64,000 bases of DNA from NCBI GenBank assembly GCA_965113315.1, contig OZ220363.1; one strand, given 5' to 3'. Within the stretch, counting starts at the first letter, position 1; the number at the start of each line of letters is the position of its first letter. Both the position numbers and the translations under genes were made by a program. This DNA comes from Podarcis vaucheri (taxonomy: Eukaryota). Shown here one piece after another: positions 1,522-30,186 of this stretch. The notes under the pieces are model-generated. The model saw only the letters and a list, made by a program, of their open reading frames with translations. It was not told the DNA's origin and made no database searches.

Positions 1522-1539
1522 TAGTTTGTGGGGTTATCC

Positions 1540-4834: not shown

Positions 4835-4940
4835 CCCTAAGTGATTGCTTCTTTTTCTATAGAACCTCTTGGGACTGGTGTTAAGATCAACAGAGAGAAC
4901 CCTCATGGTAGTTTCACTGCTCTCTCAGGTTTTGGTAGCC

Positions 4941-7209: not shown

Positions 7210-7331
7210 AGGAAGATGTATACGGTATTTATTCCAATCTGTTGTTCAAGCATTTCCTTTCAGAGGGAATAGTCTGTGGACATCATTTATTTGTTGCTTC
7301 AGATAAAGAGGAGCCTGCTGATATAGTAAAG
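7210..7331 (+). CDS. ELP4: ELP4 coding exon (equivalent to human exon 3), 122 nt
   Basis: ttttcacag| acceptor and |gtaaaa donor; encodes [41 protein letters not shown], matching recalled human ELP4 [41 protein letters not shown]; phase 1 in, phase 0 out. Confidence 0.96.
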
Positions 7332-7885
7332 GTAAAAAACAACAACATCCATGTAATTATTGCTTAATATCTTCTAAGCTAGATGGTGCTAAAAGCAATC
7401 CTAAAGCCGACAGACATTCCCATGCCCTGTATGAGAACTCTGTTAGTAAAGGACTTGTGTGTTACCATAACCAACCATGCCTTGCCTACTCCCTCCATGT
7501 AAAAAGTAGTGTATGGGTCAGGAGAGTATAGCGTTATTAATTACCTAAAATCTTCCTTAATACGTTACCTGTACCTTGATTAAATTCAGTAATTATAGTG
7601 ATTCAGAGAAACTAGGGGTGGAGATTGTGTTGGGAAAATGGGGCAAAGAAAAGAAGTAAAATGACATCACATCTTGAGTTTGAAGTGCTTGTACTTCTCA
7701 TACTAGGTACCAATGAGATTGACCAAACAGGAGCCTGAATGCCATTTTTTATGAAGCATGGGTTGGTGGCACACACAGAGTAGTGTGCACCAGTGTTATG
7801 AATTAGTTTGCCATTTTATATTGTTGTGTTGATTTGTGGGGCCTAGCTTTAGAAATAACTGAAACTAACCATATATAAATACCAT

Positions 7886-9212
7886 TTGGATCCCTTCCAG
7901 TCGGGATTCAGGCCTCATCATGGGACTGAAACTGCCTTGGTCGCACTGGTTGATGATCTCCGGCGGGCTAGGGACAAAGGTGAGAGCTGTTTCCTAGTTC
8001 TGCTGGATCTCTCAGCGGCGTTTGATACCATCGACCATAGCATCCTTCTGGACCATCTTGAGGGGCTGGGAGCTGGGGGCACTGTTATACAGTGGTTCCG
8101 CTCCTTCCTCCTGGGCCGTGTTCAGAAAGTGGTGGTGGGGGATGAGTGTTCAGACCCCTGGGCTCTCACTTGTGGGGTGCCTCAGGGTTCTGTCCTCTCC
8201 CCCATGCTTTTCAACATCTACATGCGGCCGCTGGGAGAGATCATCAGGAGGTTTGGGCTGGGTGTTCATCAGTATGCGGATGATACCCAGCTCTACCTCT
8301 CTTTTAAATCAGAACCAGTGAAGGCGGTGAAGGTCCTGTGTGAGTGTCTGGAGGTGGTTGGAGGATGGATGGCGGCTAACAGATTGAGGTTGAATCCTGA
8401 CAAGACAGAAGTACTGTTTTGGGGGGACAGGAGGCGGGCAGGTGTGGAGGATTCCCTGGTCCTGAATGGGGTAACTGTGCCCCTGAAGGACCAGGTGCGC
8501 AGCCTGGGAGTCATTTTGGACTCACAGCTGTCCATGGAGGCACAGGTCAAATCTGTGTCCAGGGCAGCTGTTTACCAGCTCCATCTGGTACGTAGGCTGA
8601 GACCCTATCTGCCTGCGGACTGTCTCGCCAGAGTGGTGCATGCTCTGGTTATCTCCCGCTTGGACTACTGCAATGCACTCTACGTGGGGCTACCTTTGAA
8701 GGTGACTCGGAAACTACAACTAATCCAGAATGCGGCAGATAGACTGGTGACTGGGAGCGGCCGCCGAGACCATATAACACCGGTCTTGAAAGACCTGCAT
8801 TGGCTCCCAGTACGTTTCCGAGCACAATTCAAAGTGTTGGTGCTGACCTTTAAAGCCCTAAACGGCCTTGGTCCAGTATACCTGAAGGAGCGTCTCCACC
8901 CCCATCAGTCTGCCCGGACGCTGAGGTCCAGCGCCGAGGGCCTTCTGGCGGTTCCCTCATTGCGAGAAGCAAAGCTACAGGGAACCAGGCAGAGGGCCTT
9001 CTCGGTAGCGGCGCCCACCCTGTGGAACGCCCTTCCAGCAGATGTCAAAGCGATAAACAACTACCTGACATTCAGGAGACATCTTAAGGCAGCCCTGTTC
9101 AGGGAAGTTTTTAACGTGTGATATTTTATTGTATTTTTGGTTTTTATGGAAGCCACCCAGAGTGGCTGGGGAGGCCCAGCCAGATGGGCGGGGTATAAAT
9201 AATAAATAATAA

Positions 9213-9256
<44 letters not shown>
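7886..9256 (+). mobile_element. young 5'-truncated L2 LINE with an uninterrupted 411-codon RT/C-terminal ORF (7886-9121)
   Basis: Motifs QSGFR, LLDLSAAFDT, GVPQGSVLSP, YADD, LNPDKTE, RLDYCN, LHWLP; short 3' UTR and (TAA/TTA)n tail. Confidence 0.95.
9195..9256. repeat. (TAA)/(TTA)n microsatellite forming the L2 tail
   Basis: Direct read. Confidence 0.9.
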
Positions 9257-9259
<3 letters not shown>

Positions 9260-9523
9260 AAAACTTCAGTTACCAGAAGTTGAAAATATCAAATACACTT
9301 AATATCAACACATTATATCAATACTCCACAATAATACTTATTTTAAACGTCTTTTAAAAATAATAGTATTATGTAGCAAACTATGAAAAGTAGCTTTTGT
9401 ACTCGTTGTTCTTCCTGGCCTTTATCACCTGAGCCTTAGGATTTGGATATTCATTGATTTCTGTTGGCCCCACAACCTACCTTAAAGAGGTAGGGGCAGC
9501 AGCACAGACAACACTGGGGAGTA

Positions 9524-9937
9524 TTGTTGTTGTTGTTTAGTCGTTTAGTCGTGTCCAACTCTTCGTGACCCCATGCACCAGAGCACGCCAGGCACTTCTG
9601 TCTTCCACTGTCTCCCACAGTTTGATCAGATTCATGTTTGTAGCTTCGAGAACACTGTCCAACCATCTCATCCTCTGTCGTCCCCTTCTTCTTGTGTCCT
9701 CAATCTTTCCCAGCATCAGGGTCTTTTCCAGGGAGTCTTCTCTTCTCATGAGGTGGCCAAAGTATTGGAGCCTCAGCTTCACGATCTGTCCTTCCAGTGA
9801 GCACTCAGGGCTAATTTCCTTAAGAATGGATGCGTTTGATCTTCTTGCAGTCCATGGGACTCTCAAGAGTCTCCTCCAGCACCATAATTCAAAAGCATAA
9901 ATTCTTCGGCGATCAGCCTTCTTGATGGTCCAGCTCT
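9524..9937 (-). mobile_element. BovB (RTE clade) LINE 3' end
   Basis: ORF 9537-9866 (RVPWTARRSN...YFGHLMRR...SLEKTLMLGK...RGRQRMRW); (CAA)n tail; 12-bp TSD cactggggagta at 9512-9523 and 9938-9949. Confidence 0.93.
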
Positions 9938-10322
9938 CACTGGGGAGTACTTCTGGCTAAAAGATAACGTGGCAGCTAGCTGTGCAGTGGACACAAGTCT
10001 CAAAGAGGCCATAGAATAATGAGTCAGTAGATAGATTAGCAAAGCAGAGAAAAGGCTGGAGGAGACTGAGTAAGGAAGCAAGAGGTGAAGGCTTCGAAAA
10101 AGGGAACAAAGAGGAAGAGAAAGTGGAAAAATGAGAAAGAAGAGAATATAGAGGATCAGAGCTGGGAAGCTTTACCTCAATGGAGATTGAGACTAGCAGC
10201 TAGGAGAAAAATAGGGGAAGGTCTGGATCTAACAACCCCAGCGCCGCATCCAGAAAGTCTGAGAGGCAGGTCCCAGCTGTGATCTTTCGTTGTTTGAGGT
10301 AAAGGATAAGATGGTGCCCTAG

Positions 10323-13300
10323 TAGAATCATAGAATCATAGAGTTGGAATAGACCACAAGGGCCATCGAGTCCAACCCCCTGCCAAGCAGAAAACACCAT
10401 CAGAGCACTCCTGACATATGGTTGTCAAGCCTCTGCTTAAAGACCTCCAAAGTAGGAGACTCCACCACACTCCTTGGCAGCAAATTCCACTGTCAAACAG
10501 CTCTTACTGTCAGGAAGTTCTTCCTAATGTTTAGGTGGAATCTTCTTTCTTGTAGTTTGGATCCATTGCTCCGTGTCCACTTCTCTGGAGCAGCAGAAAA
10601 CAACCTTTCTCCCTCCTCTATATGACATCCTTTTATATATTTGAACATGGCTATCATATCACCCCTTAACCTCCTCTTCTCCAGGCTAGACATGCCCAGC
10701 TCCCTTAGCCGTTCCTCATAAGGCATCGTTTCCAGGCCTTTGACCATTTTGGTTGCCCTCCTCTGGACACGTTCCAGTTTGTCAGTGTCCTTCTTGAACT
10801 GTGGTGCCTAGAACTGGACACAGTACTCCAGGTGAGGTCTGACCAGAGCAGAATACAGTGGCACTATTACTTCTAGATGCTATACTCCTATTGATGCAGC
10901 CCAGAATTGCATTGGCTTTTTTAGCTGCCACGTCACACTGTTGGCTCATGTCAAGTTTGTGGTCAACCAAGACTCCTAGATCCTTTTCACATGTACTGCT
11001 CTCAAGCCAGGTGTCACCCATCTTGTATTTGTGCCTCTCATTTTTTTTGCCCAAGTGCAATACTTTACATTTCTCCCTGTTAAACTTCATCTTGTTTGTT
11101 TTGGCCCAGTTCTCTAATCTGTCAAGGTCGTTTTGAAGTGTGATCCTGTCCTCTGGGGTGTTAGCCACCCCTCCCAGTTTGGTGTCATCTGCAAATTTGA
11201 TCAGGATGCCCTTGAGTCCATCATCCAAGTCGTTGATAAAGATGTTGAATAAGACCGGGCCCAAGACAGAACCCTGTGACACCCCACTAGTCACTCTCCT
11301 CCAGCATGAAGAGGAACCATTGATGAGCACCCTTTGGGTTCGGTCAGTCAGCCAGTTACAAATCCACTGAGTGGTAGCATAGTCAAGACCGCATTTTACC
11401 AGCTTCTTTACAAGAATATCATGGGGCACCTTGTCGAATGCCTTGCTGAAATCAAGGTAGGCTACATCCACTGCGTTCCCTTCATCTACCAGGCTTGTAA
11501 TTCTGTCAAAAAACGAGATCAGGTTAGTCTGACATGACTTATTTTTCAGAAATCCATGCTGACTATTGGTGATCACAGCATTCCTTTCTAGGTGCTCACA
11601 GACTGTTTGCTTAATGATCTGCTCCAGAATCTTCCCTGGTATTGATGTCAGACTGACTGGGCAATAATTATTTGGGTCCTCTCTTTTCCCCTTTTTGAAA
11701 ATAGGGACAACATTTGCCCTCCTCCAGTCTGCCGGAACTTCGCCTGTTCTCCAGGAATGCTCAAAGATGACTGCCAGTGGTTCTGAGATCACATCTGCCA
11801 GTTCTTTTAATACTCTTGGATGCAGTTCATCTGGCCCTGGAGACTTGAATACATCTAAACTAGCCAAGTATTCTTGTACTATCTCCTTAGTTATTCTGGG
11901 CTGTGTTTCCTCTGCTGAATCTTTTGCTCCAAATTCTTCAGGTCGGGCATTGTTTTCTTTATCGGAGAAGACTGAGGCAAAGAAGGCATTCAGCCCTTTC
12001 TGTGTCCCCTGTTTGCATGTCACCATCTTCTCCTCTGAGTGACCCCACTGTTTCTTTGTTCTTCCTTTTGCTACGGACATACCCATAAAAGCCTTTTTTG
12101 TTGCTTTTAACCTCTCTAGCAAGCCTGAGTTCATTCTGTGCTTTAGCTTTTCTGACTTTGTGTCTACATGTGCTGGCTATTTGTTTGAATTCCTCTTTGG
12201 TGGTTTCCCCCCTTTTCCATTTTTTGTACACATCCTTTTTAATCTTAACTCAGTTAAAAGTTCTTTAGATAGCCACCCTGGCTTCTTTAGGCACCTTCCA
12301 TGTTTCCGTCTCATTGGTATTGCCTGACGTTGTGCTTTTACTATCTCCCTCTTAACAAACTCCCAGCCATCATGAACTCCCTTTCCTTTTAGTATTACTG
12401 TCCATGAGATCTCACCCAGCACTTCCCTAAGTTTTATGAAGTCAGCTTTCTTAAAGTCAAGAAATTGAGTACTAGTATGCTTGGCTGCTCCTTTCCGCTG
12501 TATAGTAAACTTCAGAAGAGCATGATCACTCGCGCCTAATGATCCTTCCACTTCTCCCCCACTAACCAGGTCATCAACATTGGTTAGGACCAGATCTAAA
12601 ATGGCTGTTCCTCTTGTTGCTTCTCCCACTTTCTGGACAATGAAGTTGTCTGCAAGGCCAGTGAGGAATCTGTTTGACCTTATGCTCTTGGCTGAGTTTG
12701 ACATCCAACAAATATCCGGGTAATTGAAGTCCCCCATTACTACTATCTCCCTTCCTTTTGCATGCTTGGCCATCTGTTCCAGGAAGGCATCATCTATGTC
12801 CTCCGTTTGGCTTGGGGATCTATAGTAAACTCCCACAATGAGGTCTCTGTTATTCTTCTCTCCCTTAATTTTGACCCAAATGCTCTCACTTTGGCTTTGA
12901 GGTTCTAAATCTTGGATCTCTTCACAGGTATACACATCCCTGACATATAACGCCACTCTTCCTCCTTTCTTGTCTGGTCTGTTTCTGTGAAATAGATTGT
13001 ATCCCTCCATTATTACATTCCAATCGTGGGACTTATCCCACCAGGTTTCAGTGATGCCTATTATGTCATATTTGGTTTACTGTACCAAGAGCTCAAGCTC
13101 ATCTTGTTTATTTCCCATGCTTTGTGCATTAGTGTACAGACATTGAAGTCCATTAATCATTCCCCCGTGTCTCTTATTTAAAGATTTTTTCCTCCCACCA
13201 CTAGGTCTGCGTGCTGTTTGCTCCATTTGGTCTATGGCATTTGGATGATCATCTTCATCAATTGATAGACTCCTACCTTCAGGAGCACTGTCTCCCTCCC

Positions 13301-13505
13301 CCACATTAGTCAGTTTAAAGCCCTCCTGATGAGGTTTCTGAGATTTTTGGCAAAAACATTCCTCCCAACCATTGTGAGGTGCAGCCCATCGCTTGCCAGA
13401 AGTCCATCTTCAAGAAACTGCAGTCCGTGATCTAAGAATCCAAACCGTTCTTGTTTACACCATTTCCCTCTCTCCCTGGGCCACGTCGTTCAACTGGGAG
13501 GACAG
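10323..13505 (-). mobile_element. CR1 LINE, 5'-truncated within ORF1, ORF2 frameshifted
   Basis: (ATTCTATG)n 3' tail; RT with FADD (10782-12134); APE endonuclease (12177-13010: GDFNYP, SDH); CLYTNAQS ORF2 start; ORF1 SGNH esterase remnant (LASDGLHL). Confidence 0.95.
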
Positions 13506-14970
13506 TAGATTCAACATACAGAAGATGATCAGACTGGCAGCTGAATCATACTTAAACGCTGATAATGGGTCACTGTGCTCTACTACACCTAAGGACAGCA
13601 GACTAACGTATGGAGTGTATGGCAGACTTCATAGCAGACACAGCTCTGACCTACAACACTTCATTCTCATTCCCATTCCTTCCACCCTCACATCTATAGC
13701 CTGAGGCTCCTACATCTCTCTGCCTAATTGTGGGTTGCCCTGTTGAGAGGGAAATGTTTTGTTGAATATCTGTTATGAAATGTAAATTCACCTTCACTTT
13801 TGTATCCTCATTAGGCTTTTTTCTTGAATTAATACTCTTAAACATGAACAAAAGAGGGAAAGGTTTACTGGAATTTCTGTTTACAGTGACATGTGTATCA
13901 GACATTCATTGAGCACATTAAGGGTTGATTTCATCTGTTATGCTATGATCTTTCACAGAAGATAACTTTTTCCATGGCTGTGGTCAAGCTGGTGGTATCA
14001 GAGGTTTTAAGTCTCCAAATACAAGTTGCTGGGAAACAGAGTCAGGAGAGTTGTGTTGTGCTCATAACCTGCATATGGACTTCCCATAGGCACCTGGCTT
14101 CCGACTATAAGAAAAGAATGAGATGGGCTTTTGGTTTGATCTACCCTTATCTCAATAATCTGGGTTTTATTAGACAGTAGGTTTGGAAATGTTCCAATGT
14201 TACTTACTGTCACTCCATCCCAATAAACCATTGCTCCTTAACAGCATATCATCAGTTTGCAACTAATCCAGTATATGGGTGACTAACAACAAGCTAAGAC
14301 AATTTATACATATGATTCACTGTAGAAATTTTTGAATTGACCTGTTTTAATTTTATGATATGTGATTGGGAGTTTCTTGATCCTATAACCAAGACAAATA
14401 TTGCTGGTTCTAGGAGAGGGAAGAGATGGTTTTATAGACCATAATTATGTTAAAACTGTGTAACTAAAAGACACGTAGAACATAAAAAAGCCCCATCAGC
14501 TGCCTAAGATATATTATATTACCACCCAGCAATTTATCCATCATCCTTTGAAAACACATTCATGCCTATTGTAGTCAAAGCTTCTTCAGGAAGTCAGCAT
14601 TAAGATGTAACATTGTTGAAAAATTACACCCCTGTAAAAATCCTATAGAACAATATACAGGGGGTTTTAAACAGGATATTTAAAACATTTCTCTTCAGTC
14701 ACTTCATCTTTCTAACAGACAGCTGTACTGCTGCATACTAGAACATAATAAATTATAAAGTAAAAACTAAACCAAATCTTTATGTGACCTGATTACAGTG
14801 TCATGCAGAATTATTCTTCAGTATTTTGTAGAATCCAGAAAGTGTGCTTAGGAAGATACATGTGATGAGTTGTAAGTGGGACTCATTTTCATTCTAACAA
14901 GTGAAGGTTAGCAGTGTGCTTCAGTGTTATTGGTTTCATTGGTTTTTGGGTCCGTTTAACCTCTGCTCAG

Positions 14971-15330
14971 AAGGATGCCAGTGGCGCTGTGGTCTAAACC
15001 ACTGAGCCTAGGTCTTGCCAATCGGAAGGTCAGTGGTTCGAATCCCCGCGACGGGGTGAGCTCCCGTTACTTGGTCCCAGCTCCTGCCAACCTAACAAAT
15101 CAAAAGCACGTCAAAGTGCTAGTAGATAAATGGGTACCGCTCGGATGGGAAGGCAAACGGTGTTTCTGTGCGCTGCTCTGGTTTCACCAGAAGCGGCTTA
15201 GTCATACTGGCCACATGACCTGGAAACTGTCTGCACACAAACGTCGGCTCCCTCAGCCAGTAAAGTGAGATGAGCACCATAACCCCAGAGTCGTTCGTGA
15301 CTGGACTTAACTGTCAGGGGTCCTTTACCC
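14971..15330 (+). mobile_element. Sauria SINE (more diverged subfamily)
   Basis: Same head and body as the other copies; perfect 16-bp TSD tttaacctctgctcag at 14955-14970 and 15331-15346. Confidence 0.9.
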
Positions 15331-16843
15331 TTTAACCTCTGCTCAGCCATGAAGCTCATTTAGTGTTCGTAGCCAAATGCTATCAGCCTAGCCTGTCTTC
15401 CAGTGAGAATGCATCTCCAGCCAAGAATTTCCCTAAGACTGCAATCATTATTCCACTTACCTAGGAGTAACCCCCCCCCCGTGAATTCAGAAGGACCTCT
15501 TTTGAGTAGACTTGGAGGGAGGACTCAGGAAAGTGATCCCCTCCTTGACAAGTAATACCACATTCTTGGGGGTGGGCACTGGCTCCACAGGTTCATCTGA
15601 TAGCAGCACTTCTGGGGCTGGTCCTGCATGTCCTTTGCCTTCAGTTTTAGAGTCCTCATCTCTGTCATCCTGTGAAAATGAATCTGACTCCTGGTCCCAG
15701 ACATTAGTCACCAGGTCTTAGTGGCCATGGAAGAGATATTTTTCGTTCATTTTAGCTTATTCATCAAAATCCATTTTAAGTCGCCTTCTCCTTTTTTCAG
15801 CTCCTTCAAATCCATGGTTTTATTTTCCTTTCTTTCATTTGCCTAGATCAAACTTTGGCCCAGTTCAGATATAACAAGCTATGCTTTAGTGTTTTGTGAA
15901 CAAACTGCACAAATAAACAGTACCCTCTTCTACTTAGTGCATGTGTGAAGGAGACTGAAAGCAGTGAAACTCTGAACTAACCACCATTTCCGGTTACATC
16001 GAAACTTGGAAAACTATTATTTATTCTAACAATGTTTAATGTAAACAATCCAGGATCAAACAGTGGTTCTAATCCTCATTTGTTTGAACCAACCACCATT
16101 GAAAGACACAAGAGTTTCCCAACTATGAATGTAATTGTAAAGCCTAGTTTATTTAAAAATTAAAGCTTTCAGTCCCCTTGTGCATGGAAGAGCAGCTGAG
16201 GGGGAGTACAGGAAACCAGTACAGTACAGTACAGACTCAATGTGGTCCATTTTTATAACTCTTAACCAGTGTGGGCCTTTATTATTTTGAATGCTGTTGT
16301 ATTAGCTACCATTGGTTTTCCCCACACTATTTAAAATACTCTTTCAGAAATATTATAATCTGTTAAACCTCTGTGCTGAATGACTATCATAGTGGTTTAA
16401 AATCATGCTAACAGTCTTTAATTATTATTATTTTAACTAGAATGCTTGTATAATTAAGGATTTAAGGTGACTGAAGCAAAATAGTGTTTTGTTTTGTTTT
16501 AGTTTTCTGAATTTGATAATGTTGTGATTGTTATTTCCACCTCTAGTTTTCTGCAAGCTATGGAAAGCATTTACTTACAATTGATATAATTGTAAGGAAG
16601 AATTGTTTAAGGTATTGTTGTTTTACATTCTGGAGATGCTACCAATAATGCTTCCAAATGGAAGCTTGATAATATCCTTAGTTTTAACAGCAGACAGACA
16701 AAGCAGCTAGTTGAAGGTAGTGAGAATTGGTGTGTGAAAGAGGAGGGAAAGAAAGTGTGGCCCTGCATCCTATTCCCAATTCCTCTAATCCTCAGAAGCA
16801 TTACCTCTGCATGGGTCCTCATTTTTAAAACTTAAAGCATTTA

Positions 16844-17066
16844 TAGAGTTGCCATATTTCAAACAGTGAAAATCCAGACAGAAAAGTTGTTAAGCTTTTT
16901 GGGGCAAAAAAATGCAAAAAGAAATAAATGCTATTTTTATGCAAAAACGGCACTGCCAACGTGGGCTGCGATGCGTCTGGATTTTTCCAATTTCCACACG
17001 GACACTGCTGCCGACTGCAGTATTCCAGGAATATGTTTGGAAAAATCCAGATGTATAGCAACCCTA
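16844..17066. mobile_element. old hAT-like MITE
   Basis: TIR tagagttgccata / tatagcaacccta; TSD not recoverable. Confidence 0.5.
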
Positions 17067-17326
17067 ATTTGGTAAGCATTTTCTGGAAGAGCAGACAGAC
17101 TCGACTTATGTGTGTTTAACTAATGCTCAGGGTTTTCCTATTCATCCACTGTAGTCTACCTTTTATGGTAGCCAGAGTTTATCAGATTCAGTTATGTAAC
17201 ATTTTGAAAGCATGCAAGGAATGAAGCAAGTTCTGTTATTACCAATCAAACTTATATTATCAACTAAAATGAACATTTTCTTCTTGCCTCCCCCCCCCCC
17301 CGAAAAAAAGAGCTACGGAGCCTATA

Positions 17327-17568
17327 TAGTGGTACCTCGGGTTAAGTACTTAATTCGTTCCGGAGGTCCAAACTTAACCTGAAACTGTTCTTAACCTGAA
17401 GCACCACTTTAGCTAATGGGGCCTCCTGCTGCCGCCACGCCACCGGAGCCTGATTTCTGTTCTTATCCTGAAGCAAAGTTCTTAACCTGAAGCACTATTT
17501 CTCGGTTAGCAGAGTGTGTAACCTGAAGTGTATGTAACCTGAAGCGTATGTAACCTGAGGTACCACTG
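17327..17568. mobile_element. Tc1/mariner(Tigger)-type MITE, family A
   Basis: TIR (c)agtggtacctcgggtta / taacctgaggtaccactg, TA TSD, internal aacctgaag repeats; reverse complement of the copies at 46366 and 47834. Confidence 0.88.
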
Positions 17569-19804
17569 TATATAGTTCAGATCACTTTGTGCAACCCTTC
17601 TAGCACTAGAGAGTAAATCATCCCCACATTATTCAAAATTTGGTTATTGTAGCTTAGCACATTTTAAATCTGGATAGTGCTGTACAATGCGCATTTTCAA
17701 AGAAGTTCTTTAATATTCTGACAAAGATGGACATTGTAGAAGCAGTGTCCATGACCAGCCACCTTTGTAAAGAAGAATGAGGCCATCTCGAGTTACAGGG
17801 ATTTTGGATGCCATAAAAGTTAGACTACAGTGAATGAATAGGTTAAAATCTGAGTATTAGGCAAACACCTGAGTTTGCTGTGAGTATATATGATGGTAAC
17901 CTTAACTCACTTTCTGATATTTTATGTGCATGCAAAAGTATGCCATCTGTCTTCAGCTTTCTATTCCTTAATGTCAAACCGTTTCCCCCAAGTGGTTTAA
18001 ATTTCAGAGGGACATTTACATTTGTGCTAAATGTATATGTGCTTTAAATATCCAACATCATTTTGAAAATGAACATTTGTGAATATAGAGCCTTTATTTA
18101 AAAAATTATCCATACATGGGTGTGTTTGGTTTTTCACTGAATAAATCCCTGCGTGGTGTTCTTATTGTGCTAATGCTCTTTATTCTATTTTACTCATACT
18201 GTGTCATTGAGATTCTCCTGATCTATCTAGGAGAATAGTGAAAGAGTAGAATAACGGGATTGTCCTTTCATATATATTTTATTATATACTAAAAATTTTA
18301 GTAGTTTAAACATAGAAAATAATAGATTTGACTTAGACCACTTACTCAAAGTCAGTTAGAAGTCACTTTTTTATTATGCTTTTCGTATTGGATCAGATTG
18401 TTATAAAATGTGTGATCTTTGCTGCATATTTTGTTGTTTCTTCAGCTTGTAAACCACCTTGTGTGTAGCAATATAGAAATCTGGTATGCAACATAAAGTG
18501 AAATGAAATGAAATAATAAAAAATGATATCTTCATGTTCAGAACCCAGCTACTGTTCCTCATTTATCATTTAGCTGTTAGAATTTTTGTAGTTAATACAA
18601 AGATTTGAATTTAGATTCTGTTGGCTTCAGTTGGTTTAAATAAATAAAAAAGCATAGGACCAAGTCTCATTTGAAGAAATTAACTATACAATCACTTGTT
18701 TATATTAATTAAAAATAGGGCTTGACTTTGTCCAGGAAAATATATTCCTATTTTTTTAAAAAAATAATTGTTGTTACTATACATAATATACTTTGAAGTA
18801 GTTCCTTTCCTAATTGCCTTTTTTCCAATGTCCTACGTTTAAGGAACAACACTTATTTATGTATCTTTGAAAAATTACTATGTAAATATCACTTCAAACA
18901 GGAATCAATTTAGACTCATACACTTTTTAATGTGTTCTTAATCATAGCTTCAACAAAACTGCAAATGATTATTAGAACATAATAGATAATATTTAAAATT
19001 CATCTTTTTAAAAAAATGAAAGGATCAAAGAAGTTCATTTAAGAGGGATTTCACATACAGCATGAATTATGTCGCTAAATAATAGCACAGTAGTACTTCT
19101 CCAGCATTGTAAAATAGCTTAGAGAGAAGTATGATGCCTGTAGTTAGTGTAATGCATTGGTAATTAAGAGGGTGTAAGGTTAAGCTTCATTAACTGTTGT
19201 AGGACTGTGGCTTGGGTTTTATTATGCCCTAGAGAACAGAAGAAGAGAGAGAGGTCAAACTATTAGAACCTGATTTTGTTTAGTGCATCTGCCAAAGTAG
19301 GCAGAACAATGTAGCAGTTGACATAAGGAACAGAAATTCCTAACAGATATGAGGAAGATGCATTCTGATGTAGAAAAGCAAGATATTTAGTTGTACTGGA
19401 GAAGAAACCATTCCTGTGAAGGGAAGCTGTGAAAGCACATATCATTTTAACTACATTAAACTATCTCTCCCGCCCCTTTCCCCTGTTCCTTTTGTTTACA
19501 TATCTCCCATAAAACCAGTTAATGTGAGGAAATCAGGGTTTTTAAAGTATTAAAATCAAATGGGATGGTCTTTCTGGTGCAGGTGCAGTGCCTGCATGCA
19601 GGTTACAATCTGTTTCTCCCTTCTCTCACATGGGATGAGCCAGGTTGCAGGTATATGATGGGCTGGTATGGAGAACAGATTTCCCCACGCCTCCCATCCA
19701 GTAGCCCTGACATGCTTACACTGCAGTGGTTTTGAAAAATACGTACTGGCGTCCTGTCCCCTACACTATTCCAGTGCATTATTTGTTTCTGTGTACATGA
19801 ACCT

Positions 19805-20168
19805 GGGACGCGGGTGGCGCTGTGGGCAAAAGCCTGAGCGCCTAGGGCTTGCCGATCGAAAGGTCGGCGGTTCGAATCCCCACGGCGGGGTGCGCTCCCG
19901 TTGTTCGGTCCCAGCGCCTGCCAACCTAGCAGTTCGAAAGCACCCTCGGGTGCAAGTAGATAAATAGGTACCGCTTACTAGCGGGAAGGTAAACGGCGTT
20001 TCCGTGTGCGGCTCTGGCTCGCCAGAGCAGCGATGTCACGCTGGCCACGTGACCCGGAAGTGTCTCCGGACAGCGCTGGCCCCCGGCCTCTTGAGTGAGA
20101 TGGGCGCACAACCCCAGAGTCTGTCAAGACTGGCCCGTACGGGCAGGGGTACCTTTACCTTTACCTTT
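19805..20168 (+). mobile_element. Sauria SINE (young, CpG-rich)
   Basis: Intact A/B boxes, (ACCTTT)3 tail, TSD acatgaacct. Confidence 0.93.
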
Positions 20169-20220
20169 ACATGAACCTGGGAGTGAAGAGGAGGGAGGCA
20201 TCAAGTCCTCTGGACTGTCA

Positions 20221-20359
20221 CAGCCTTTCTCAACCTGTGGGTCCCCAGATGTTGTTGAACTACAACTCCCATCACCCCTAGCTAGCAAGGCCAGAGCTCA
20301 GGGATGATGGGAGTTGTAGTCCAACAACATCTAGGGGACCCACAGGTTGAGAACCGCTG
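20221..20359. mobile_element. palindromic hAT-type MITE (MER5/URR1-like architecture)
   Basis: Near-perfect hairpin ttctcaacctgtgggtcccc...actacaactcccatca / tgatgggagttgtagt...ggggacccacaggttgagaa; older relatives near 2470-2620 and 57305-57430. Confidence 0.75.
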
Positions 20360-20899
20360 ATAGAGCATGCTTACGTCTGTACACATGCAGTTGTAAGTGA
20401 GGAGGAGGGAGAATCACGGCTCTCTTGAGCTCTGAGGATCCTTGGGGGGGGGCACCATGTATCATTTTTATAACAACAACCTAATTTAATAGATTTACCT
20501 ATCATTAAATAGCTATTAGATACTTTAAAGAGTCTCTTAAAGTTACTTGTTAATTTTCCGGATACAAGAGGGAAACATTTTGTAAATTTTGTCCAAACAT
20601 TTTACCTTCCCAATGTAGAGATTTAGGTTTATTTGTTTGTTGTTGTTTTTAAATCCTTTCAAAATTCAAGGGACTGTGAGTAGTCATTTATTTATTACAC
20701 TGAAGCCCCACACTTCCTACAGGTTGCTCAGGGTGGTATATATACATTGTCTCCTCCAGGACCCCATTTTGAAGTAGGGGGATTGGCCCAAGTGCACCAG
20801 TGAGCTACATAGCTGAGTGAAGTTTTAAATATGAATCTGTCCGTTTCTGATCTGATACTCCATAGCCACTATGCTAAACTGACATATATCTTAGAGGAG

Positions 20900-21850
20900 C
20901 TATTTTTAATGTGTACAGATTACATGTTTTTAATTGCAACTTCACAATTTTGTTTCAAATTAGGCATATTTACTTATTAGCATCGACAGTTTATTTCTGA
21001 TGAGGACTGTAATTGACATTTTCTTTCTCTGCTCCTTCACCATCATCAGGCTAGTGACACTGGGATGCTATAGTCATACATTGTTGACTGCATTAATTTG
21101 CATTTATAGACTCTGACAGACCTCTATTACACACACGATTTGGGATTGGGGGTGTCTTAAGTATTTGCAAAATATTTGGAGGAAGTCATTTAATGGACAT
21201 ACCTCAATTGTATGTTCCTCAAACATCACCCTGTGAGGCAACCGCATACTTGCTTTCTCATATGTCTGCAGCACAGATCAAATAATGATCTGCATTGTTT
21301 CCGTGTTGTAACAAGAAAAACATTTGGGAATTCTTAAAAAGTGCTACTGGTAAAAACAAGGGGGAGAACGCTGTTTAAGGAGAGACCACATTAAAGTGTT
21401 TCTTCTGGCTCTCAGCCACAAGATTTTAATGTGCAGCCTAGGACATTTGGTCACCTCTGCTACAGTGTGAGGCAGTCATTGCAGCAGCAGGTGTGCCCCT
21501 CATTGTAAGAGGCAGAATATAAAACAATGAGAAGCTTAGTGAGTTAAGTGACTGCTTACATGGGATTTATACTAATGATAATCTCTTCCAGAACAATGGC
21601 CTATGGCTGCACTGAATTGTTTTTGTATATAGCATACCGTTATCTTTATGTCAATTAAAGTGTTGCAGGTGTTACAGAGAAAACGGACGGCAGTTTTATT
21701 GAATACAACACCTGGGAAAGTAATTTAAATTGGATTATAGCTGCAAAAACATTTACATAACATTTGCCTTAAAAAAATTTAAGTAGCTTATTTTAATATT
21801 TGAAACAATGAGTTATATTACAATTAGCTTAACCAAATAATAAAAACAAC
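20900..21850. promoter_or_regulatory. candidate conserved enhancer (PAX6/ELP4 regulatory block)
   Basis: No recognisable TE; clustered SOX (CATTGT/ACAATG), octamer and TGACAG motifs; conservation not verifiable here. Confidence 0.35.
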
Positions 21851-23057
21851 TTTGCTTATAGATGATGAGATTAAAAAAATCAATTCTATTTTTACTTCCA
21901 GATTAGTGTCATTCTATCATTCTGTTTTATACTTGTTTATTCAGAAGTAAGTTTCACTGTGCTAATGGAGTTTCCTCTCAGAAAAAGCTTCCCATAAATT
22001 ACCCCAAAGATTGGTTTAAAAAGCATCTTCTTTCCTTATTATTTCCCTATTCTAAAACCATCTTGCCTTCTAGTAATTCATTTTTCTGGTCAGCAAAGAC
22101 CAGCAAACATTTTTCAAAGACTTTCTTTGCTCTGGGTCATGTCAGTGCATGCAATAAAACTTTGGGGGACTCAAAGTGGGGTCTTCTCTGTGGTGTCGTC
22201 ATGGCTTTGGAGTTAATTGCCCAGGGAAGTTTGTCAGGCTAGTGTAATGTAGGAATCTGAATGTAGAGAATCATTTTTTATTCACCCAAGAGCTTACAAA
22301 ATGGGTCTTTAAAAACGTTTTTTCCTACTGTTGGGTAGCGCTAATATAGCATTTATATTTGTCTGTATCGCTATGAAGATTTTAGGTAGAAATTTGATGG
22401 ATAAATATGATAAATAAAGTCACTGGTCCTTTTCAGATGTTACCATTCCATGTAAAGAAAACAAGGGGGGCAACAGAGACCAAAAAAAAACAGAGGCAAA
22501 ATATGTTCATGGAGCCACCACAGTTACATGAGAAGGCTCCCCACTACACACAGTCACCTCCATGAGCTGAGGGTAATAAGAATGACAAGGCAGAGGGCAA
22601 AGCTAGTGAGCACAACTCTGTTACCCCCCCTCCCCCGCTTCTCAATGCATTTTCTTCTCATGGAAGGGTAATTTTTGTGAGGCAAATTTTACTTAAAAGT
22701 CAGTATTGGATTCTCTGCACATAGCTTGAGTCTTGGGTGCAAATATATATCTGCCAAGGACACAGGAAGCTTCCTTATGCTAAGTCAGAATATTGGTGCA
22801 TCTAGGTTGTTGTCTATACTGACTGGCAGCAAATCAGTAACCCCACTGCCGCAAACACATTTAAAAGGCCTTATAATGATATTTAATTATTTATTGGTTA
22901 TTAGCTGTTCACTAAATATATATCTAGCTACATTTTAGCCTTCATGATATTAGATACATTTCTGAGACCATGGAAAAGACAACATAAAAAATGTACCGGT
23001 AATCACCTGTGTTTGTTTTCTGTAAATATGATGATGAAAAATCAATCCGAACAAAAT

Positions 23058-23290
23058 GGGCTGTAGCCAACAAAATCATCCCATTTGTGCAAAGACTTCC
23101 ACTTGTGCAATAGAACTTGTGCAATAGAACCCTTCCCTCTTTTCTCCCCACACCCCTTCAAGTCCACTCCAGAGGGTTTGGGGAAACCCAAAACAGATGG
23201 GGAAGCACACAGTGGAGAAGGGGGAGGGGAAGTTCCATTGTGCAAGTGGAAGACCTTGTGTGAATGGGACAACTGTGTTGGATACAGCCC
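23058..23290. mobile_element. palindromic MITE, possibly PIF/Harbinger type
   Basis: Long TIRs gggctgtagccaaca / tgttggatacagccc and cttccacttgtgcaat / attgtgcaagtggaag. Confidence 0.65.
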
Positions 23291-23874
23291 TTTAATTATA
23301 TTAACTGCGGGTCTGCAAATGGCAGCCCAGGAAGAGGGTTGATCTGCTTTTGGGCAGGCACTCGATCATACTATTCAAAGCATTTTTACCCACATCTACT
23401 TCTCACACTGCCATTTGTCTTTTGTTGAATCTCCTGTCCCTTAATTAGGAAGAACTCTAGCTCAACTTCTGTAACTTATCTTAGTAACAATGTTACGATT
23501 TGTTCTAATGAGATAAATGGTGAGTGAACTTCAGTAGAATCACTTCCTTGAGCACATCTCATGCCTCTTGATTATAATTCTTATTGTACTCAAGTCTGCT
23601 TGAAGAGTGGGAATCATGAATTCTATATTTAAACCTTGGATCTGTTCCAAGACTCTTACAGATAATTACAAATTCAGTTTGAAACGAGGGAAGAAACTTC
23701 TAGGATGGCAACCTACAATACCAATTTCTGTTTTTTAAAAAAACTAACTTGCTTAATGTGAACTATTGTTGGGTGATTATTCTGTAGGCTTATAATAGAA
23801 CCTGGTAAGAAAACAATTTAACTTTATTTTTATAAATTGACTTTTGAATTCCTATAGTTTGTCTTACTGTAGAA

Positions 23875-24007
23875 TAAGGTTACCAGACATCCCTGTTTCC
23901 CGGGGACAGTCCCCGGATTTACAAATCAGTCCCCTGACAAAATCCATCTATTTAGTAGGGGGTGGAAAAGTCTCCCTGGATTCATTGGAAAAAATCTGGT
24001 AACTTTA
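23875..24007. mobile_element. hAT MITE
   Basis: TIR taaggttaccaga / tctggtaacttta; perfect 8-bp TSD ctgtagaa. Confidence 0.85.
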
Positions 24008-24087
24008 CTGTAGAAAGAAGGAAATTGGATCACTCAGCTGCCCTTAGAGAGGTAGTTCTGGTTTGGGTTATTGGACGTTGGAGTCTG

Positions 24088-24742
24088 CTGGGCATAGTCG
24101 GCCAATCGGTGTTAAAGAAGGACAGAATTTTCTTTATGTATGCTACAACAGCAGCAAGAATACTCATCGCAAAGTATTGGAAGACACAAGATCTACCCAC
24201 TTTGGAAGAATGGCAGATGAAAGTGTTGGACTACATGGAATTGGCGGAAATGACTGGTAGAATCTGAGACCAGGGAGAAGAGTCGGTGGAAGAAGATTGG
24301 AAGAAATTTAAAGATTATTTACAGAAATATTGCAAAATTAATGAATGTTAGAATGATGTTTGATTGAAGTTAAGTGGTTTCTAGCTGTAATGATATAAAA
24401 GAATATGGAAAATTGGATTTCTAAATAGGTAAAAATTTAATGTTACAATATATTAAGATTAAAGATCAGGATAATAAGGAGGGAAAGAAATTGTTGAATT
24501 AATTAATTGAATTGGAACACAAAAAGGGAGGTATGAGGAGGTCAGGGAAACAAGGATATGAATGTAAGATATGGAAAGATTGATTTTTTTTATTTTTATG
24601 TTTTTCCTTTTTTCTGTAAGTGTACTTACTTTTTTATTCTGTATTTTTCTTGTATTTTTATTTTTGTCTTTTACCTTTGTATTTTTTGTTTTTATGTAAT
24701 TCCTCTTTCTGAAACTTTAATAAATATTTTATTTTAAAAAAA
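24088..24742 (+). mobile_element. L1 LINE 3' end
   Basis: ORF2 C-terminus LLGIVG...MYATTAARILIAKYWK...EEW...; AT-rich 3' UTR, AATAAA and A tail; TSD gttggagtctg. Confidence 0.85.
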
Positions 24743-26949
24743 GGAAGTTGGAGTCTGAAACGTTTGGAGGGCACCAGGTTGGGGAAGGCTGCTGTACAGG
24801 CTACAGGGGGAGGAATGTCAGTAGTTGATGTAGCAGAAAGAAGTTCTTTTAGATTTGTCTAACAGATGGCAGTGGATAGCAAGAAGGGGACATAATTTGC
24901 TTACCCACTGTTGTCCTAATGATCAAAAATCTCAACAAAGGTAAGCAAGGAGTGTACACTGTTCCTTGACAATTAAGTCAATTTGATTTATAGAGACACA
25001 ACACTTAATAAAGTATCTTTAAGCCAGACTATTGGAATATTAACGGAGTGTCTTACTACTATTCTGACTAACATATATATTCAGGGAGTAAACTTTTTAA
25101 AAATAATGATTGTTTTAAACATGATATGCCACTTCAGAGCATTCAAAGCATTTCAGATTTATTTTGTTATAATCCTTAGTATTTCTTTAAGCTAGATCAA
25201 TATTCTCCCTGTATTGCAGATGCGGGACTAAGTGGCAGAGGCTAGATTTGAACTAGGAACTTTCTTATTTGCAGCTCAGTTTCTTAGCTGTTGCTCCACA
25301 CCAGCTCTCATTTAGCCTATGTTTGGTATTCTGAGTCGTGATCCCCCTCTGCTTCTGGGTCACTGCATCAAAATTGAGATTGGGTGTCTTGCAAAGGTAC
25401 ACTCTAGCATGCTAATTGCACTCTGGCAACTCATGCCATAGAAATAGGATGCCAGATCCATTAGGTAGGCCCTAGTATTCAAAAAACATTCAACACATTA
25501 TCTCATGCACATAACAGACTGAGATGTCTATTACTACAACACTTGGTCAGCTGCAATATCCTTGCAATCTTTTCAGCTGATTAGCAAGTTAGCTCCCAAT
25601 TGGTAGAATGCCTATGTAACTAGGCCAAAAATAAATAAATAAATAAATCAGTCCTGTCAAGTTGGTATCTGCATTTCCACTGCAGTCACTGGTCTAAAAA
25701 GCAAATGCAAATGTTACAGTCACCACCACAAATCATTTATTGCTACATTTGTACTAACCTTTCTGACGTGTTAGTATTTATTTATAAAACACGTATGCAT
25801 CTTTTATCTTTTTTAAATTCCCCCAGGATAGGAATCAGAGAGAAATGCAAACTTACTTCAGACTTATTTTAAATTTATTTCAGTATGTGAACTGAAACAC
25901 AGTTATCCTTTGTAATTCACACTTCTCAAAAATATTAGTGAAAACAATGTGCAAATATGTGTATGGGGGGAACTGTTGGCAAAAATGTTTTTAATTATAT
26001 TAGGCAAAATGATGTACAAAAATGTGATAGTAGGAGAAATGTGTACGTAAATGTATATTATTTTGTGTGGGGATTTAAGAAACTCAAAGTGATGTGGAAA
26101 GAGAACACATTGAAAAAAATGAGGAACTTAGAAAAACCAAAATCGATAGATTGATCTACCTTCCCCAAGATTATAAAATTATAACATTCAACAGGCATTA
26201 AGATACCGTAATATTTAAAATGTTTATTTATATGGCTCCACAACATAAGAATGTGTGTACATTCAGCTGTAAAATGTCTACATTAGAGAACTCTGCGTAA
26301 GTTATTACATACTCGAATATTGTATTGAGATGTGTTTTGCAACACCACCCATGTCCCTTTTGCATGATAAACCCATTTTGTGTAACAGGTTTGTATATGT
26401 CTGAGGGTGAGTTTGACTTGAGTCAAAGGATAGCAGGTAAATGGGATCATTGGCAATTTTTCAGTTTTAGATCAGGATTCAATTGTCTTGTCGTTTGTGA
26501 ATGAATGGGTTCCTTAATTTTGATGCCTTGGCATGCTTGAAATAAAAGTAAAAGGAGAAAATCCAAACAAATAAATGCATTTGTTGATCCTAATGGTTTA
26601 TTCCGGGCAGATTCTTATTGTATGGCATTTCTCTGCTTTTAGCACTTTCCCCTAATACGGTAATTGGCTTTGAACTGCTGGGACTACCATGCATGTGATG
26701 ACAGGCTCTGGTGGATTGAGCGCACAAGACAAATAGTGGGTCCAGTGGTCATATGCTGTAGAGGGAAATGAGGGGCTCGTGAACCTGGGAAGGTAGCTCA
26801 TCTAGGATAAGGAAAACTCTGATCCTAAACCTTTGCTGCCTTGTGCCAATACTCATTTCTGAGAAAAGCTTAAGGAGTAAAGCTTCAGGAGTAAGTCAAG
26901 AAAAAACCCACATTTGCTGCCTTGCAGCCTCCATAATGTAATCTTATTA

Positions 26950-27790
26950 TTGTTGTTGTTGTTGTTGCTTTTATTTGCTTTTCTATTACAGTTCTTCACT
27001 GGTGTATCAACATTAGTACAACAACTGTTGCATTCAGTGTGTGTGTGTGTGTAAAGGGGGGGGGACTTCTTTTCATGTATTTCCCTTCCACTCCTTCCCT
27101 GGTTTCCTCTACAGTGGTGCCCCGCAGTACGAATGCCTCGCAAGACGAAAAACTCGCTAGACGAAAGAGTTTTCCGTTTTTTGAGTTGTTCCGCAAGACG
27201 AATTTCCCTATGGGTTTGCTTCGCAAGACGAAACGTCTTGCGAGTTCTTGCGAGTTTGTTTCCTTTTTCTTAAAGCCGCTAAGCCGTTAATAGCTGCTAA
27301 GCCGCTAATAGTCGTGCTTCGCAAGACGAAAAAACCGCAAGACGAAGAGACTCGCAGAACAGATTAATTTCGTCTTGTGAGGCACCACTATATTTCCAAC
27401 CTATCCACATCTTCTTGTTCTTCTAAATTTTCCTCTCTCCTCTTTATCGCATGTTATAACTTATGCTGCTGAATTATGCTCATCCTGCTAGATTGTCTTA
27501 TTATAATAATTTTTCACATATTCTATATATAACATCCAGTCCTCATTAAGTTTTTTTATCTGTTTCTTATTCTGTTAATCATACCCGCCAGTTCTGAGTA
27601 TTCCAGCATTTTATGATGCCACTCCTCTTTTGTTGGACCCGCATCTGTTCTCCACTTTTGTGCAAGTAAAATCTGCACAGCTGTGGTCGCATACATCAAT
27701 AGACTCACTTGTTTTGGGAGGAATTCTGTCCTTACTATACCCAGAAGGTAAGCTTCTGGGTTTTTAGGAAAGGATCCTTTAAACTTTTTT
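26950..27790 (-). mobile_element. older L1 3' end interrupted by a MITE
   Basis: Minus strand encodes PEAYLLGIV...LLMYATTAVQILLAQKWRT...EEW..KMLEYSELA, homologous to the 24088 copy. Confidence 0.75.
27112..27390. mobile_element. Tc1/mariner(Tigger)-type MITE, family B (short)
   Basis: TIR cagtggtgcc...; TA TSD; repeated cgcaagacgaa motif; inverted relative to 55899-56844. Confidence 0.88.
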
Positions 27791-28019
27791 TCAGTTCATT
27801 CCATAATGTAATCTAGCTCCTGTCCTATGCTTGCCTTTGTCATTCTCTCAGAATCAGGGAAGAAGGCATGCGACTTACATGTGGTTTGGATTACTTTTGC
27901 CACTGCAAATGTCTCTGATGTAATGCAGGAGCAAAAAATATTCTTGTGGGAGGCCAACCCCAGCCCATGTGCCCATAGTTCACCATCCCTGGAATTAAGT
28001 GTCACTATAAATAAATGAT

Positions 28020-29960: not shown

Positions 29961-30054
29961 ATCATTAATGTTTGCTGTGAGCTGTTAAATCTTCTTTAAC
30001 AATATCTCTTTAATAAAAGCAGCTCATTTAAAACATTTATTATTTTTCATTCAG

Positions 30055-30186
30055 GAACTTCCCTCACCTTTGCTGAATACCGCTGTAAATGAAATAGAAG
30101 AAGAAGCAACAGCTGTGAAGTCCAAACAAGATTCTCAGGAATCCATGAGAATAGCCTGGCGTTACCAGAACATACCAAAACTGGAG
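30055..30186 (+). CDS. ELP4: ELP4 coding exon (exon 4 equivalent), 132 nt
   Basis: tttttcattcag| ... |gtaaat; encodes ELPSPLLNTAVNEIEEEATAVKSKQDSQESMRIAWRYQNIPKLE, containing the ELP4 hallmark M-K/R-IAWRY; phase 0/0. Confidence 0.96.

What the first reader, a model, noticed from the sequence alone, without database searches (positions are those of the whole stretch)
7332..9213. Potential ELP4-L2 reverse transcriptase fusion via a new in-frame terminal exon
Seen: a consensus branch point ACTAAC (7864-7869) lies in host DNA just before the L2 insertion. The first AG after it is the L2-derived tcccttccAG (7899-7900), about 32 nt from the branch A. ELP4 exon 3 ends in phase 0 (7331) and 7901 is the first base of an L2 codon. 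A 569-nt intron would therefore join the ELP4 N-terminus in frame to 406 stop-free codons of L2 RT/C-terminus (YADD intact), ending at TGA 9119-9121 and followed by two AATAAA (9201, 9208). Inference: this is a ready-made alternative last exon. It would escape NMD and either yield a chimeric protein or attenuate full-length ELP4 by intronic polyadenylation. Caveats: the pyrimidine tract is modest, the ORF may be intact only because the copy is young, and the endonuclease and RT N-terminal subdomains (the YRPIS region) are absent, so catalysis is doubtful.
Basis: partly seen in the sequence, partly recalled or inferred. Interest (0 to 1): 0.8.

Follow-up and report, generated by a model that had tools for sequence, protein, structure and literature searches.

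The report
Young L2 insertion in ELP4 intron
A recently inserted, 5'-truncated L2 jumping-gene copy sits in an ELP4 intron of a lacertid lizard and could in principle be spliced in frame, but nothing shows that it is used, so it looks like an ordinary young insertion.

Summary
The ELP4 (PAXNEB) exon ends in phase 0 at 7331. ACTAAC lies at 7864-7869, and the first AG after it is at 7899-7900. From 7901 there are 406 open codons with YADD, ending at TGA 9119-9121. AATAAA lies at 9201 and 9208.

The element is a 5'-truncated L2-type LINE (about 7883-9256), 570 nt into a 22.7-kb intron. DNA contigs of two related organisms bridge 7882 to 9266 with only 13 letters between. The insertion is therefore absent there and is young and lineage-specific.

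The ORF is open because the copy is young. Its well-supported private changes are all nonsynonymous, and one hits the conserved QNAAAR motif. Its private divergence matches that of other young copies.

The acceptor-like site is encoded by the conserved L2 motif DPFQ|SGF, so it is a family-wide feature. It is decent by simple criteria. However, a strong donor-like site 79 nt downstream would favour a frame-shifting cassette exon over a 1.3-kb last exon.

The only RNA test showed no junction, but it had almost no power: exon depth was 1-3.5, and the RNA organism may lack the insertion.

Verdict: an ordinary neutral insertion with unproven splicing potential.

The parts
7210..7331 (+). ELP4 exon (PAXNEB profile 43-82). 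Acceptor ttttttcacag|AG, donor AAG|gtaaaa, ends in phase 0.
   Evidence: Pfam PAXNEB E 1.5e-08, 34.5 bits against a cutoff of 28. Splice contexts. Stranded RNA reads lie on it.
7332..30054 (+). ELP4 intron of 22,723 nt that hosts the insertion 551 nt from its 5' end.
   Evidence: The next exon lies at 30055-30186.
7864..7869 (+). ACTAAC branch-point-like hexamer in host DNA. Its branch A at 7868 is 32 nt from the AG.
   Evidence: The host flank runs to 7882 in relatives' contigs.
7883..9256 (+). 5'-truncated L2-type LINE copy with its 3' UTR and (ATT)n tail, sense-oriented to ELP4. The right border lies somewhere within about 9252-9265.
   Evidence: Empty-site contigs of two relatives bridge 7882 to 9266 with 13 letters between. 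Word depth is 1e6-9e6 inside the element against about 50-105 in the flanks.
7886..9121 (+). Open reading frame of 411 codons: RT from motif A onward (YADD present) plus the C-terminal domain. The N-terminal RT fingers and the endonuclease are missing.
   Evidence: RVT_1 profile 38-204 of 205. Longer siblings match profile 5-204.
7899..7900 (+). Acceptor-like AG (tcccttccAG|TCG), made by the codons for the conserved L2 motif D-P-F-Q|S-G-F.
   Evidence: Three Varanus gene models are spliced at the same motif.
7977..7985 (+). Donor-like site AAG|GTGAGA (GT at 7980-7981), 8 of 9 matches to MAG|GTRAGT. It would close a 79-nt exon, 7901-7979.
   Evidence: The true exon 3 and 4 donors score 7 of 9 by the same count.
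9201..9213 (+). Two overlapping-register AATAAA hexamers in the L2 3' end.
   Evidence: The intron holds 25 AATAAA in total.
9213..9256 (+). (ATT)14.7 microsatellite tail of the element.
30055..30186 (+). Next ELP4 exon (PAXNEB profile 84-121), phase 0 at both ends, with a strong acceptor ttattatttttcattcag|G.

Best explanation
This is a young, lineage-specific, dead copy of an abundant and recently active L2-type LINE family of lacertid lizards. It inserted by chance in sense orientation 551 nt into a 22.7-kb ELP4 intron.

The acceptor-like AG, the open frame, the AATAAA hexamers and the ATT tail all come from the element's own coding and 3' sequence. The host ACTAAC and the matching phase are coincidences of where the 5' truncation and the insertion fell.

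The ORF is open only because too little time has passed for it to break, and it is already collecting amino-acid changes without constraint.

ELP4 is most likely spliced normally from 7331 to 30055, with at most noise-level use of the cryptic sites. The insertion, its youth and the lack of constraint are shown. Normal splicing in carriers is inferred.
For: - Empty site in relatives: contigs of two related organisms bridge 7882 to 9266 with only 13 letters between (X17 record 1, X20 record 11). Their flanks differ from the window by about 1.2-2.8%.
- Abundant, recently active family: word depth is 1e6-9e6 inside the element against about 50-105 in the flanks, and about a third of laid contigs are 99% or more alike. 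The nearest database proteins are Podarcis muralis L2-type fragments at 95-97% identity and Zootoca vivipara at 94%.
- No constraint on the ORF: at five positions nearly all family reads differ from this copy (8055, 8226, 8739, 8908, 9009). All five change the amino acid, including A to D in the conserved QNAAAR motif and a CGT-to-CAT change at a CpG.
- Divergence like siblings: private residues are 0.49%, against 0.24-1.4% for the youngest siblings.
- Open frame expected: at 0.3-0.5% divergence since insertion, 406 codons stay open with probability 0.4-0.9.
- Generic acceptor motif: it is present in an old copy at 3998-4070 and in all sibling proteins.
- No RNA signal: no intron reads and no 7331-to-7901 joint appeared in two RNA runs. 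Reads ending at 7881 continue into upstream L2 sequence, not into the ELP4 exon.
Against: - By simple criteria the acceptor is one of the best in the intron. It is the only site with YAG, at least 12 of 16 pyrimidines and an AG-free CTAAC branch point 18-40 nt upstream. Twenty sites pass with the looser YTNAY motif.
- It is the first good acceptor after the donor, 569 nt away, against 22.7 kb for the true one.
- The RNA test cannot exclude use. Exon depth was only 1-3.5. All RNA reads carry T at 7325, like the two relatives that lack the insertion, where the window has A, so the RNA organism may lack it too. The reads tool also drops human-like reads in conserved genes without notice.
- Only the five best-supported private differences were displayed, and 169 more rows were hidden. 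The 5-of-5 nonsynonymous count is therefore a sample.
Confidence: 0.8

Rival explanations
1. The L2 acceptor at 7900 is used with the element's AATAAA as an alternative last exon. That would give an NMD-immune mRNA for an ELP4 N-terminus fused to 406 L2 residues, or would lower full-length ELP4 by intronic polyadenylation.
For: The frame arithmetic, branch point, AG-free gap, pyrimidine count of 12 of 16 and the two AATAAA are all real. The site is proximal to the donor. Sense-oriented intronic L1s are known to cause exonization and cryptic polyadenylation (PMC3192792). Gene predictors spliced three Varanus komodoensis models at the same L2 motif.
Against: No joint or intron read was seen, in a weak test. 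The base after the AG is T, and GG interrupts the pyrimidine tract. A stronger donor-like site 79 nt downstream competes with terminal-exon definition. The intron holds 25 AATAAA, so the signal is not special. The fusion would lack most of ELP4 and the RT fingers, so a working protein is unlikely. The insertion is absent in relatives, and the ORF shows no constraint.
Confidence: 0.07
2. The acceptor at 7900 pairs with the donor-like site at 7980 and defines a 79-nt cassette exon (7901-7979). This shifts the frame, so that the next ELP4 exon is read into a stop at its 12th codon. The result would be a poison exon that lowers ELP4 output through nonsense-mediated decay in the lineage that carries the insertion.
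For: AAG|GTGAGA matches 8 of 9 consensus positions, against 7 of 9 for the true exon 3 and 4 donors. Only 12 sites that good lie in 7400-30000. Seventy-nine is not a multiple of 3, and reading exon 4 from its third base meets a stop after 11 codons. A short internal exon fits exon definition better than a 1.3-kb last exon (established knowledge of vertebrate exon definition; inference).
Against: No joints were seen, in a weak test. NMD would also hide such transcripts. The same acceptor-donor pair is present in every longer copy of the family, so strong use would make sense-oriented intronic copies widely harmful. Nothing here measures that.
Confidence: 0.08
3. The fused ELP4-RT protein is a selected, functional new gene product (a domesticated RT fragment).
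For: Only the open frame and the intact YADD.
Against: The insertion is absent from two close relatives. The private changes are nonsynonymous and hit a conserved motif. RT profile positions 1-37 and the endonuclease are missing. Youth explains the open frame.
Confidence: 0.01

Closest known systems
Sense-oriented intronic L1 insertions that cause exonization, intron retention and cryptic polyadenylation in human genes (Kaer et al. 2011, PMC3192792)
   Same: A LINE in sense orientation inside an intron carries cryptic splice sites and poly(A) signals that can truncate host transcripts.
   Different: In that work the effects were shown with endogenous transcripts and minigenes. Here no transcript evidence exists. 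The element here is an L2-type copy with a microsatellite tail in a lizard, and the candidate acceptor lies inside the RT coding motif DPFQ|SGF.
Annotated host-gene/L2-RT chimeric gene models in squamates: Varanus komodoensis P0017, P0047 and P0062, and a Podarcis muralis MHC class I-L2 model, P0013
   Same: Host or upstream sequence is joined to an L2 RT open frame. In the three Varanus models the join falls exactly before SGFRP, the same position as 7900|7901.
   Different: Those are database gene predictions whose transcript support I could not check. Two of the three splice within the L2 itself. None involves ELP4.
TE exonization by alternative splicing as a step to co-option (TMPO/LAP2alpha, ZNF451; PMC4495291, seen only as title and start of abstract)
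   Same: A TE-derived coding sequence is used as an alternative 3' exon of a host gene.
   Different: The cited cases are, from memory and not checked here, old, conserved and selected. This insertion is absent from close relatives and shows no constraint.

Membership tests
L2-type LINE (non-LTR retrotransposon), truncated dead copy | Reverse transcriptase domain with the YADD catalytic motif | tested here: met
   RVT_1 E 2.5e-30, profile 38-204; HQYADDTQ is present.
L2-type LINE (non-LTR retrotransposon), truncated dead copy | Member of a multi-copy family with near-identical copies elsewhere | tested here: met
   Word depth is 1e6-9e6 against about 50-105 in the flanks. Podarcis and Zootoca proteins are 94-97% identical.
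L2-type LINE (non-LTR retrotransposon), truncated dead copy | An insertion: the orthologous site in relatives is empty | tested here: met
   X17 record 1 and X20 record 11 bridge 7882 to 9266 with 13 letters between.
L2-type LINE (non-LTR retrotransposon), truncated dead copy | 3' end with a short tandem-repeat tail rather than poly(A). That this marks the L2/CR1 group is from my own knowledge. | tested here: met
   (ATT)14.7 at 9213-9256.
L2-type LINE (non-LTR retrotransposon), truncated dead copy | Target-site duplication | tested here: inconclusive
   tatataaatac (7872-7882) and tatataaaaac (9254-9264) match at 10 of 11 positions. The 13 letters kept at the empty site do not fit an 11-nt duplication. 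The tool masked 9197-9265 and did not show the contig letters.
L2-type LINE (non-LTR retrotransposon), truncated dead copy | RT phylogeny places it in the L2 clade rather than CR1 or another jockey-group clade | not tested
No repeat library or clade reference set is available. Database names are generic.
TE-derived alternative terminal exon / intronic polyadenylation isoform | Sequence signals: branch point, pyrimidine tract, AG, open frame, poly(A) signal | tested here: met
TE-derived alternative terminal exon / intronic polyadenylation isoform | Transcripts that join the upstream exon to the TE acceptor | tested here: inconclusive
   No 7331-to-7901 joint in X23 or X24. Exon depth was 1-3.5, and the RNA organism may lack the insertion.
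TE-derived alternative terminal exon / intronic polyadenylation isoform | Locus-specific 3' ends after the poly(A) signal | not testable with these tools
   9197-9265 was skipped as a repeat, and reads inside the element come from many copies.
Domesticated (exapted) TE coding exon | Presence at the orthologous site in related species | tested here: not met
   The site is empty in two related organisms.
Domesticated (exapted) TE coding exon | Purifying selection on the TE-derived ORF after insertion | tested here: not met
   The five best-supported private differences all change the amino acid. Private residue rate is like that of sibling copies. A full synonymous/nonsynonymous count was not possible.
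ELP4 (PAXNEB) gene | Consecutive exons matching consecutive parts of the PAXNEB profile on one strand with compatible phases | tested here: met
   Profile 43-82 at 7210-7331 and 84-121 at 30055-30186, both phase-compatible.

The most novel reading that the evidence does not exclude
In the lineage that carries it, this insertion is spliced at a measurable level, either as a last exon ending at the L2 poly(A) signals or as a 79-nt poison exon. It would then act as a species-specific brake on ELP4 dosage. Because the acceptor and donor are built into the conserved RT coding sequence, every sense-oriented intronic copy of this very abundant family would be a latent gene-breaker.
Probability: 0.07. 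Interest if true: 0.45.

Novelty: new member of a known kind. Interest (0 to 1): 0.15.

Why it matters
As it stands it matters little. Young LINE copies with open frames in introns are common in squamate genomes, and this one shows no sign of use or selection.

Two points are mildly useful. First, it is a dated presence/absence insertion in a conserved gene, which could serve as a phylogenetic or population marker in lacertids. Second, the conserved L2 coding motif DPFQ|SGF doubles as a good-looking splice acceptor, with a strong donor-like site 79 nt after it. This may explain why annotation pipelines often produce host-gene/L2-RT chimeric models. If transcripts confirmed its use, it would make L2 orientation bias in lizard introns testable.

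Tried and rejected
- RNA junction test. The only raw RNA runs offered belong to 'organism A'. Its exon reads carry T at 7325, like the relatives that lack the insertion, and exon depth was 1-3.5. The negative result therefore cannot be used as evidence of absence.
- RefSeq 'isoforms' of host genes that are mostly L2 ORF (Rhineura floridana CFAP95 X2 and Sen15 X1, Hemicordylus capensis LRRC39 X1). I checked whether they join at the same acceptor. They do not: L2 sequence continues upstream of DPFQ.
- ACTAAC as a special signal. Rejected, because it is not enriched (25 found against 31 expected).
- Upstream ELP4 exons in 1-7200. None was recognised among open segments of 35 aa or more, so the exon number is unverified.
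- Earlier scan notes held nothing on this locus beyond the finding itself.
- MaxEntScan and SpliceAI are not available. I used transparent counts instead.
- The joined exon-plus-L2 model was deliberately not built or searched. All frame statements come from coordinates and from pieces translated by reference.
only counted columns.
- To locate the next exon I used a four-residue motif from memory as a lead, then verified it by Pfam.

Full report
**Observation**

- An exon at 7210-7331 on the + strand matches Pfam PAXNEB (ELP4) profile positions 43-82 (E 1.5e-08, above the curated cutoff).
- It has a good acceptor (ttttttcacag|AG) and donor (AAG|gtaaaa) and ends on a complete codon.
- I located the next ELP4 exon at 30055-30186. 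It matches PAXNEB 84-121 and is in phase 0 at both ends. The intron therefore runs 7332-30054, or 22,723 nt.
- I found no upstream ELP4 exon in the window, so 'exon 3' is unverified.
- The ORF 7886-9121 (411 codons) matches RVT_1 profile 38-204 and carries YADD.
- Base 7901 starts a codon of that frame, leaving 406 open codons up to TGA 9119-9121.
- ACTAAC is at 7864-7869. Its branch A is 32 nt from the AG at 7899-7900, with no AG between.
- AATAAA lies at 9201 and 9208 and (ATT)14.7 at 9213-9256.

**What the element is**

The closest database proteins are reverse-transcriptase fragments of Podarcis muralis (95-97% identity) and Zootoca vivipara (94%). More distant relatives occur in Varanus, Anolis, Rhineura and snakes. 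The window is therefore from a lacertid lizard, and the element belongs to a lacertid LINE family.

The clade could not be tested here because no repeat library is available. Longer siblings match RVT_1 from profile position 5 and carry NYRPVSN about 30 residues before the point where this copy starts.

**Age and borders**

The single read-laying run gave the most useful result.
- A 2,482-nt contig of related organism D aligns to 6700-7882 and then to 9266-9548, with only 13 of its own letters between.
- A 610-nt contig of organism F does the same (7566-7882, then 9266-9546, with 13 letters between).
- Both contigs have far more than 31 letters on each side.
- The tool masked 9197-9265 as a repeat, so the 13 letters may correspond to the last letters before 9266.
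- Both relatives therefore have the empty site, and the insertion spans 7883 to about 9252-9265.
- The flanks differ from the window by about 1.2% in D (14 of 1,183) and 1.1-2.8% in F.
- The insertion is therefore younger than that split, or is polymorphic.
- The family is very abundant: summed word depth is 1e6-9e6 in the element against about 50-105 in the flanks.
- The family was recently active: about a third of the laid contigs of D and F are 99% or more alike.
- A target-site duplication is unclear. There is a 10-of-11 match (7872-7882 against 9254-9264), but it does not fit the 13 retained letters.

**Is the open frame more than youth?**

No.
- At five positions nearly all family reads, both RNA and DNA, differ from this copy: 8055, 8226, 8739, 8908 and 9009.
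- Read in frame against siblings, all five change the residue: R to H by CGT to CAT at a CpG, Q/K to R, A to D inside the conserved QNAAARL motif, H/R to Q, and V to A.
- The table hid 169 further rows, so this is a sample rather than a census.
- Among 14 lacertid siblings, this copy has 0.49% private residues. The youngest siblings have 0.24-1.4%.
- About 3% of possible substitutions in this ORF create a stop. With 0.3-0.5% divergence since insertion, the chance that 406 codons stay open is 0.4-0.9, depending on the indel rate assumed.

**Is the acceptor special?**

It is partly special.
- The AG is the last two bases of the Gln codon in the conserved motif D-P-F-Q|S-G-F.
- The pyrimidine tract is made by the codons GAT CCC TTC CAG.
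- An old diverged copy at 3998-4070 has ccattccag at the same place, and all siblings encode DPFQSGFRP.
- Three Varanus komodoensis gene models (P0017, P0047, P0062) are joined exactly before SGFRP. Gene predictors therefore like this site, but these are predictions and not transcript evidence.
- The locus-specific parts are the 5' truncation, which placed host ACTAAC 32 nt upstream, and the 1-in-3 phase match.
- Intron 3 holds 743 YAG sites. Of these, 104 have at least 12 of 16 upstream pyrimidines, and 20 of those also have an AG-free YTNAY 18-40 nt upstream. Three have CTRAY, and only this one has CTAAC.
- The true exon 3 and 4 acceptors have 13 of 16 pyrimidines, so the site is not negligible.
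- Against it, the base after the AG is T and GG interrupts the tract.

A donor-like site AAG|GTGAGA begins 79 nt after the acceptor. It matches 8 of 9 consensus positions, while the true exon 3 and 4 donors match 7 of 9. Only 12 sites as good lie in 7400-30000.

If the acceptor were recognised, exon definition would more naturally give a 79-nt cassette exon (7901-7979). That shifts the frame, and the next ELP4 exon read from its third base meets a stop after 11 codons. The product would be an NMD target, not an NMD-immune chimeric mRNA. The AATAAA hexamers are two of 25 in the intron.

**RNA evidence**

Two stranded bulk RNA runs of 'organism A' were laid, with about 1.9 billion letters read from each.
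- Mean depth on the exon was 1.1 and 3.5.
- There were no reads in 7342-7876 and no joint from 7331 to 7901.
- The 89 and 69 reads that end at 7881 continue into upstream L2 sequence (...GGAAGAAGCGG). They therefore come from longer copies elsewhere.

This is not evidence of absence, for four reasons.
- The depth is too low to see a minor isoform.
- All exon reads carry T at 7325 (a synonymous Ile codon), like relatives D and F that lack the insertion, where the window has A. Organism A may therefore lack the insertion too.
- The tool silently drops human-like reads in conserved genes.
- Reads inside the element cannot be assigned to this locus.

**Limits**

- I did not build or search the joined exon-L2 model. 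Frames were derived from coordinates and from pieces translated by reference.
- I built no consensus of the element.

**Comparison with known cases**

Sense-oriented intronic LINEs that cause exonization and cryptic polyadenylation are well described for human L1 (PMC3192792). Squamate annotations contain many host-gene/L2-RT chimeric models. This locus is a new instance with the right sequence signals but without the defining evidence of transcripts. It fails the tests for a domesticated exon, namely orthologous presence and constraint.

**Verdict**

The most likely reading (about 0.8) is an ordinary, young, neutral L2 insertion. About 0.15 is shared by the two splicing rivals. Interest is low.

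Noticed in passing
window 9482-11561 (- strand): Another LINE lies just downstream, on the opposite strand. RVT_1 matches at 10887-11561 (E 1e-25), and a C-terminal ORF at 9537-9866 contains RRRGRQRMRWLDSV, which from memory resembles RTE/BovB-type ends. It is very highly repeated (word depth 5e6-1.5e7). Its edge is present in the relatives' contigs, so it predates the L2 insertion.
   Followed up: partly
window 3931-4164 and 4365-4499 (+ strand): An old, degraded L2-like fragment lies upstream, also in sense orientation to ELP4. It is 79% identical over 73 nt to the 5' end of the young copy and keeps the same ccattccag acceptor-like motif.
   Followed up: partly
window 7325: The window has A (ATA, Ile). 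All RNA reads of organism A and the DNA contigs of organisms D and F have T (ATT, Ile). This synonymous ELP4 difference marks the window's lineage and could serve for allele-specific expression tests.
   Followed up: no
proteins P0017, P0047, P0062 (Varanus komodoensis gene models): Three annotated models are spliced exactly before SGFRP of an L2 RT. Two of them splice from an upstream L2 site (…DKVLGR|), which suggests a recurrent predicted intron inside L2 elements. It may be a gene-finder artefact or real L2 splicing.
   Followed up: no
proteins P0004, P0005, P0049, P0013: RefSeq and Ensembl 'isoforms' of host genes consist largely of L2 RT open frames: Rhineura floridana CFAP95 X2 and Sen15 X1, Hemicordylus capensis LRRC39 X1, and a Podarcis muralis MHC class I model. 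Such chimeric models are common in squamate annotations.
   Followed up: partly
window 52527-52858: A run of 332 N (assembly gap or masked stretch).
   Followed up: no
window 7877-9267, RNA runs X23 and X24: L2 family RNA reads lie on both strands in broadly similar numbers, with some excess of the sense strand toward the 3' end. This fits pervasive read-through transcription of many copies rather than one active promoter.
   Followed up: no
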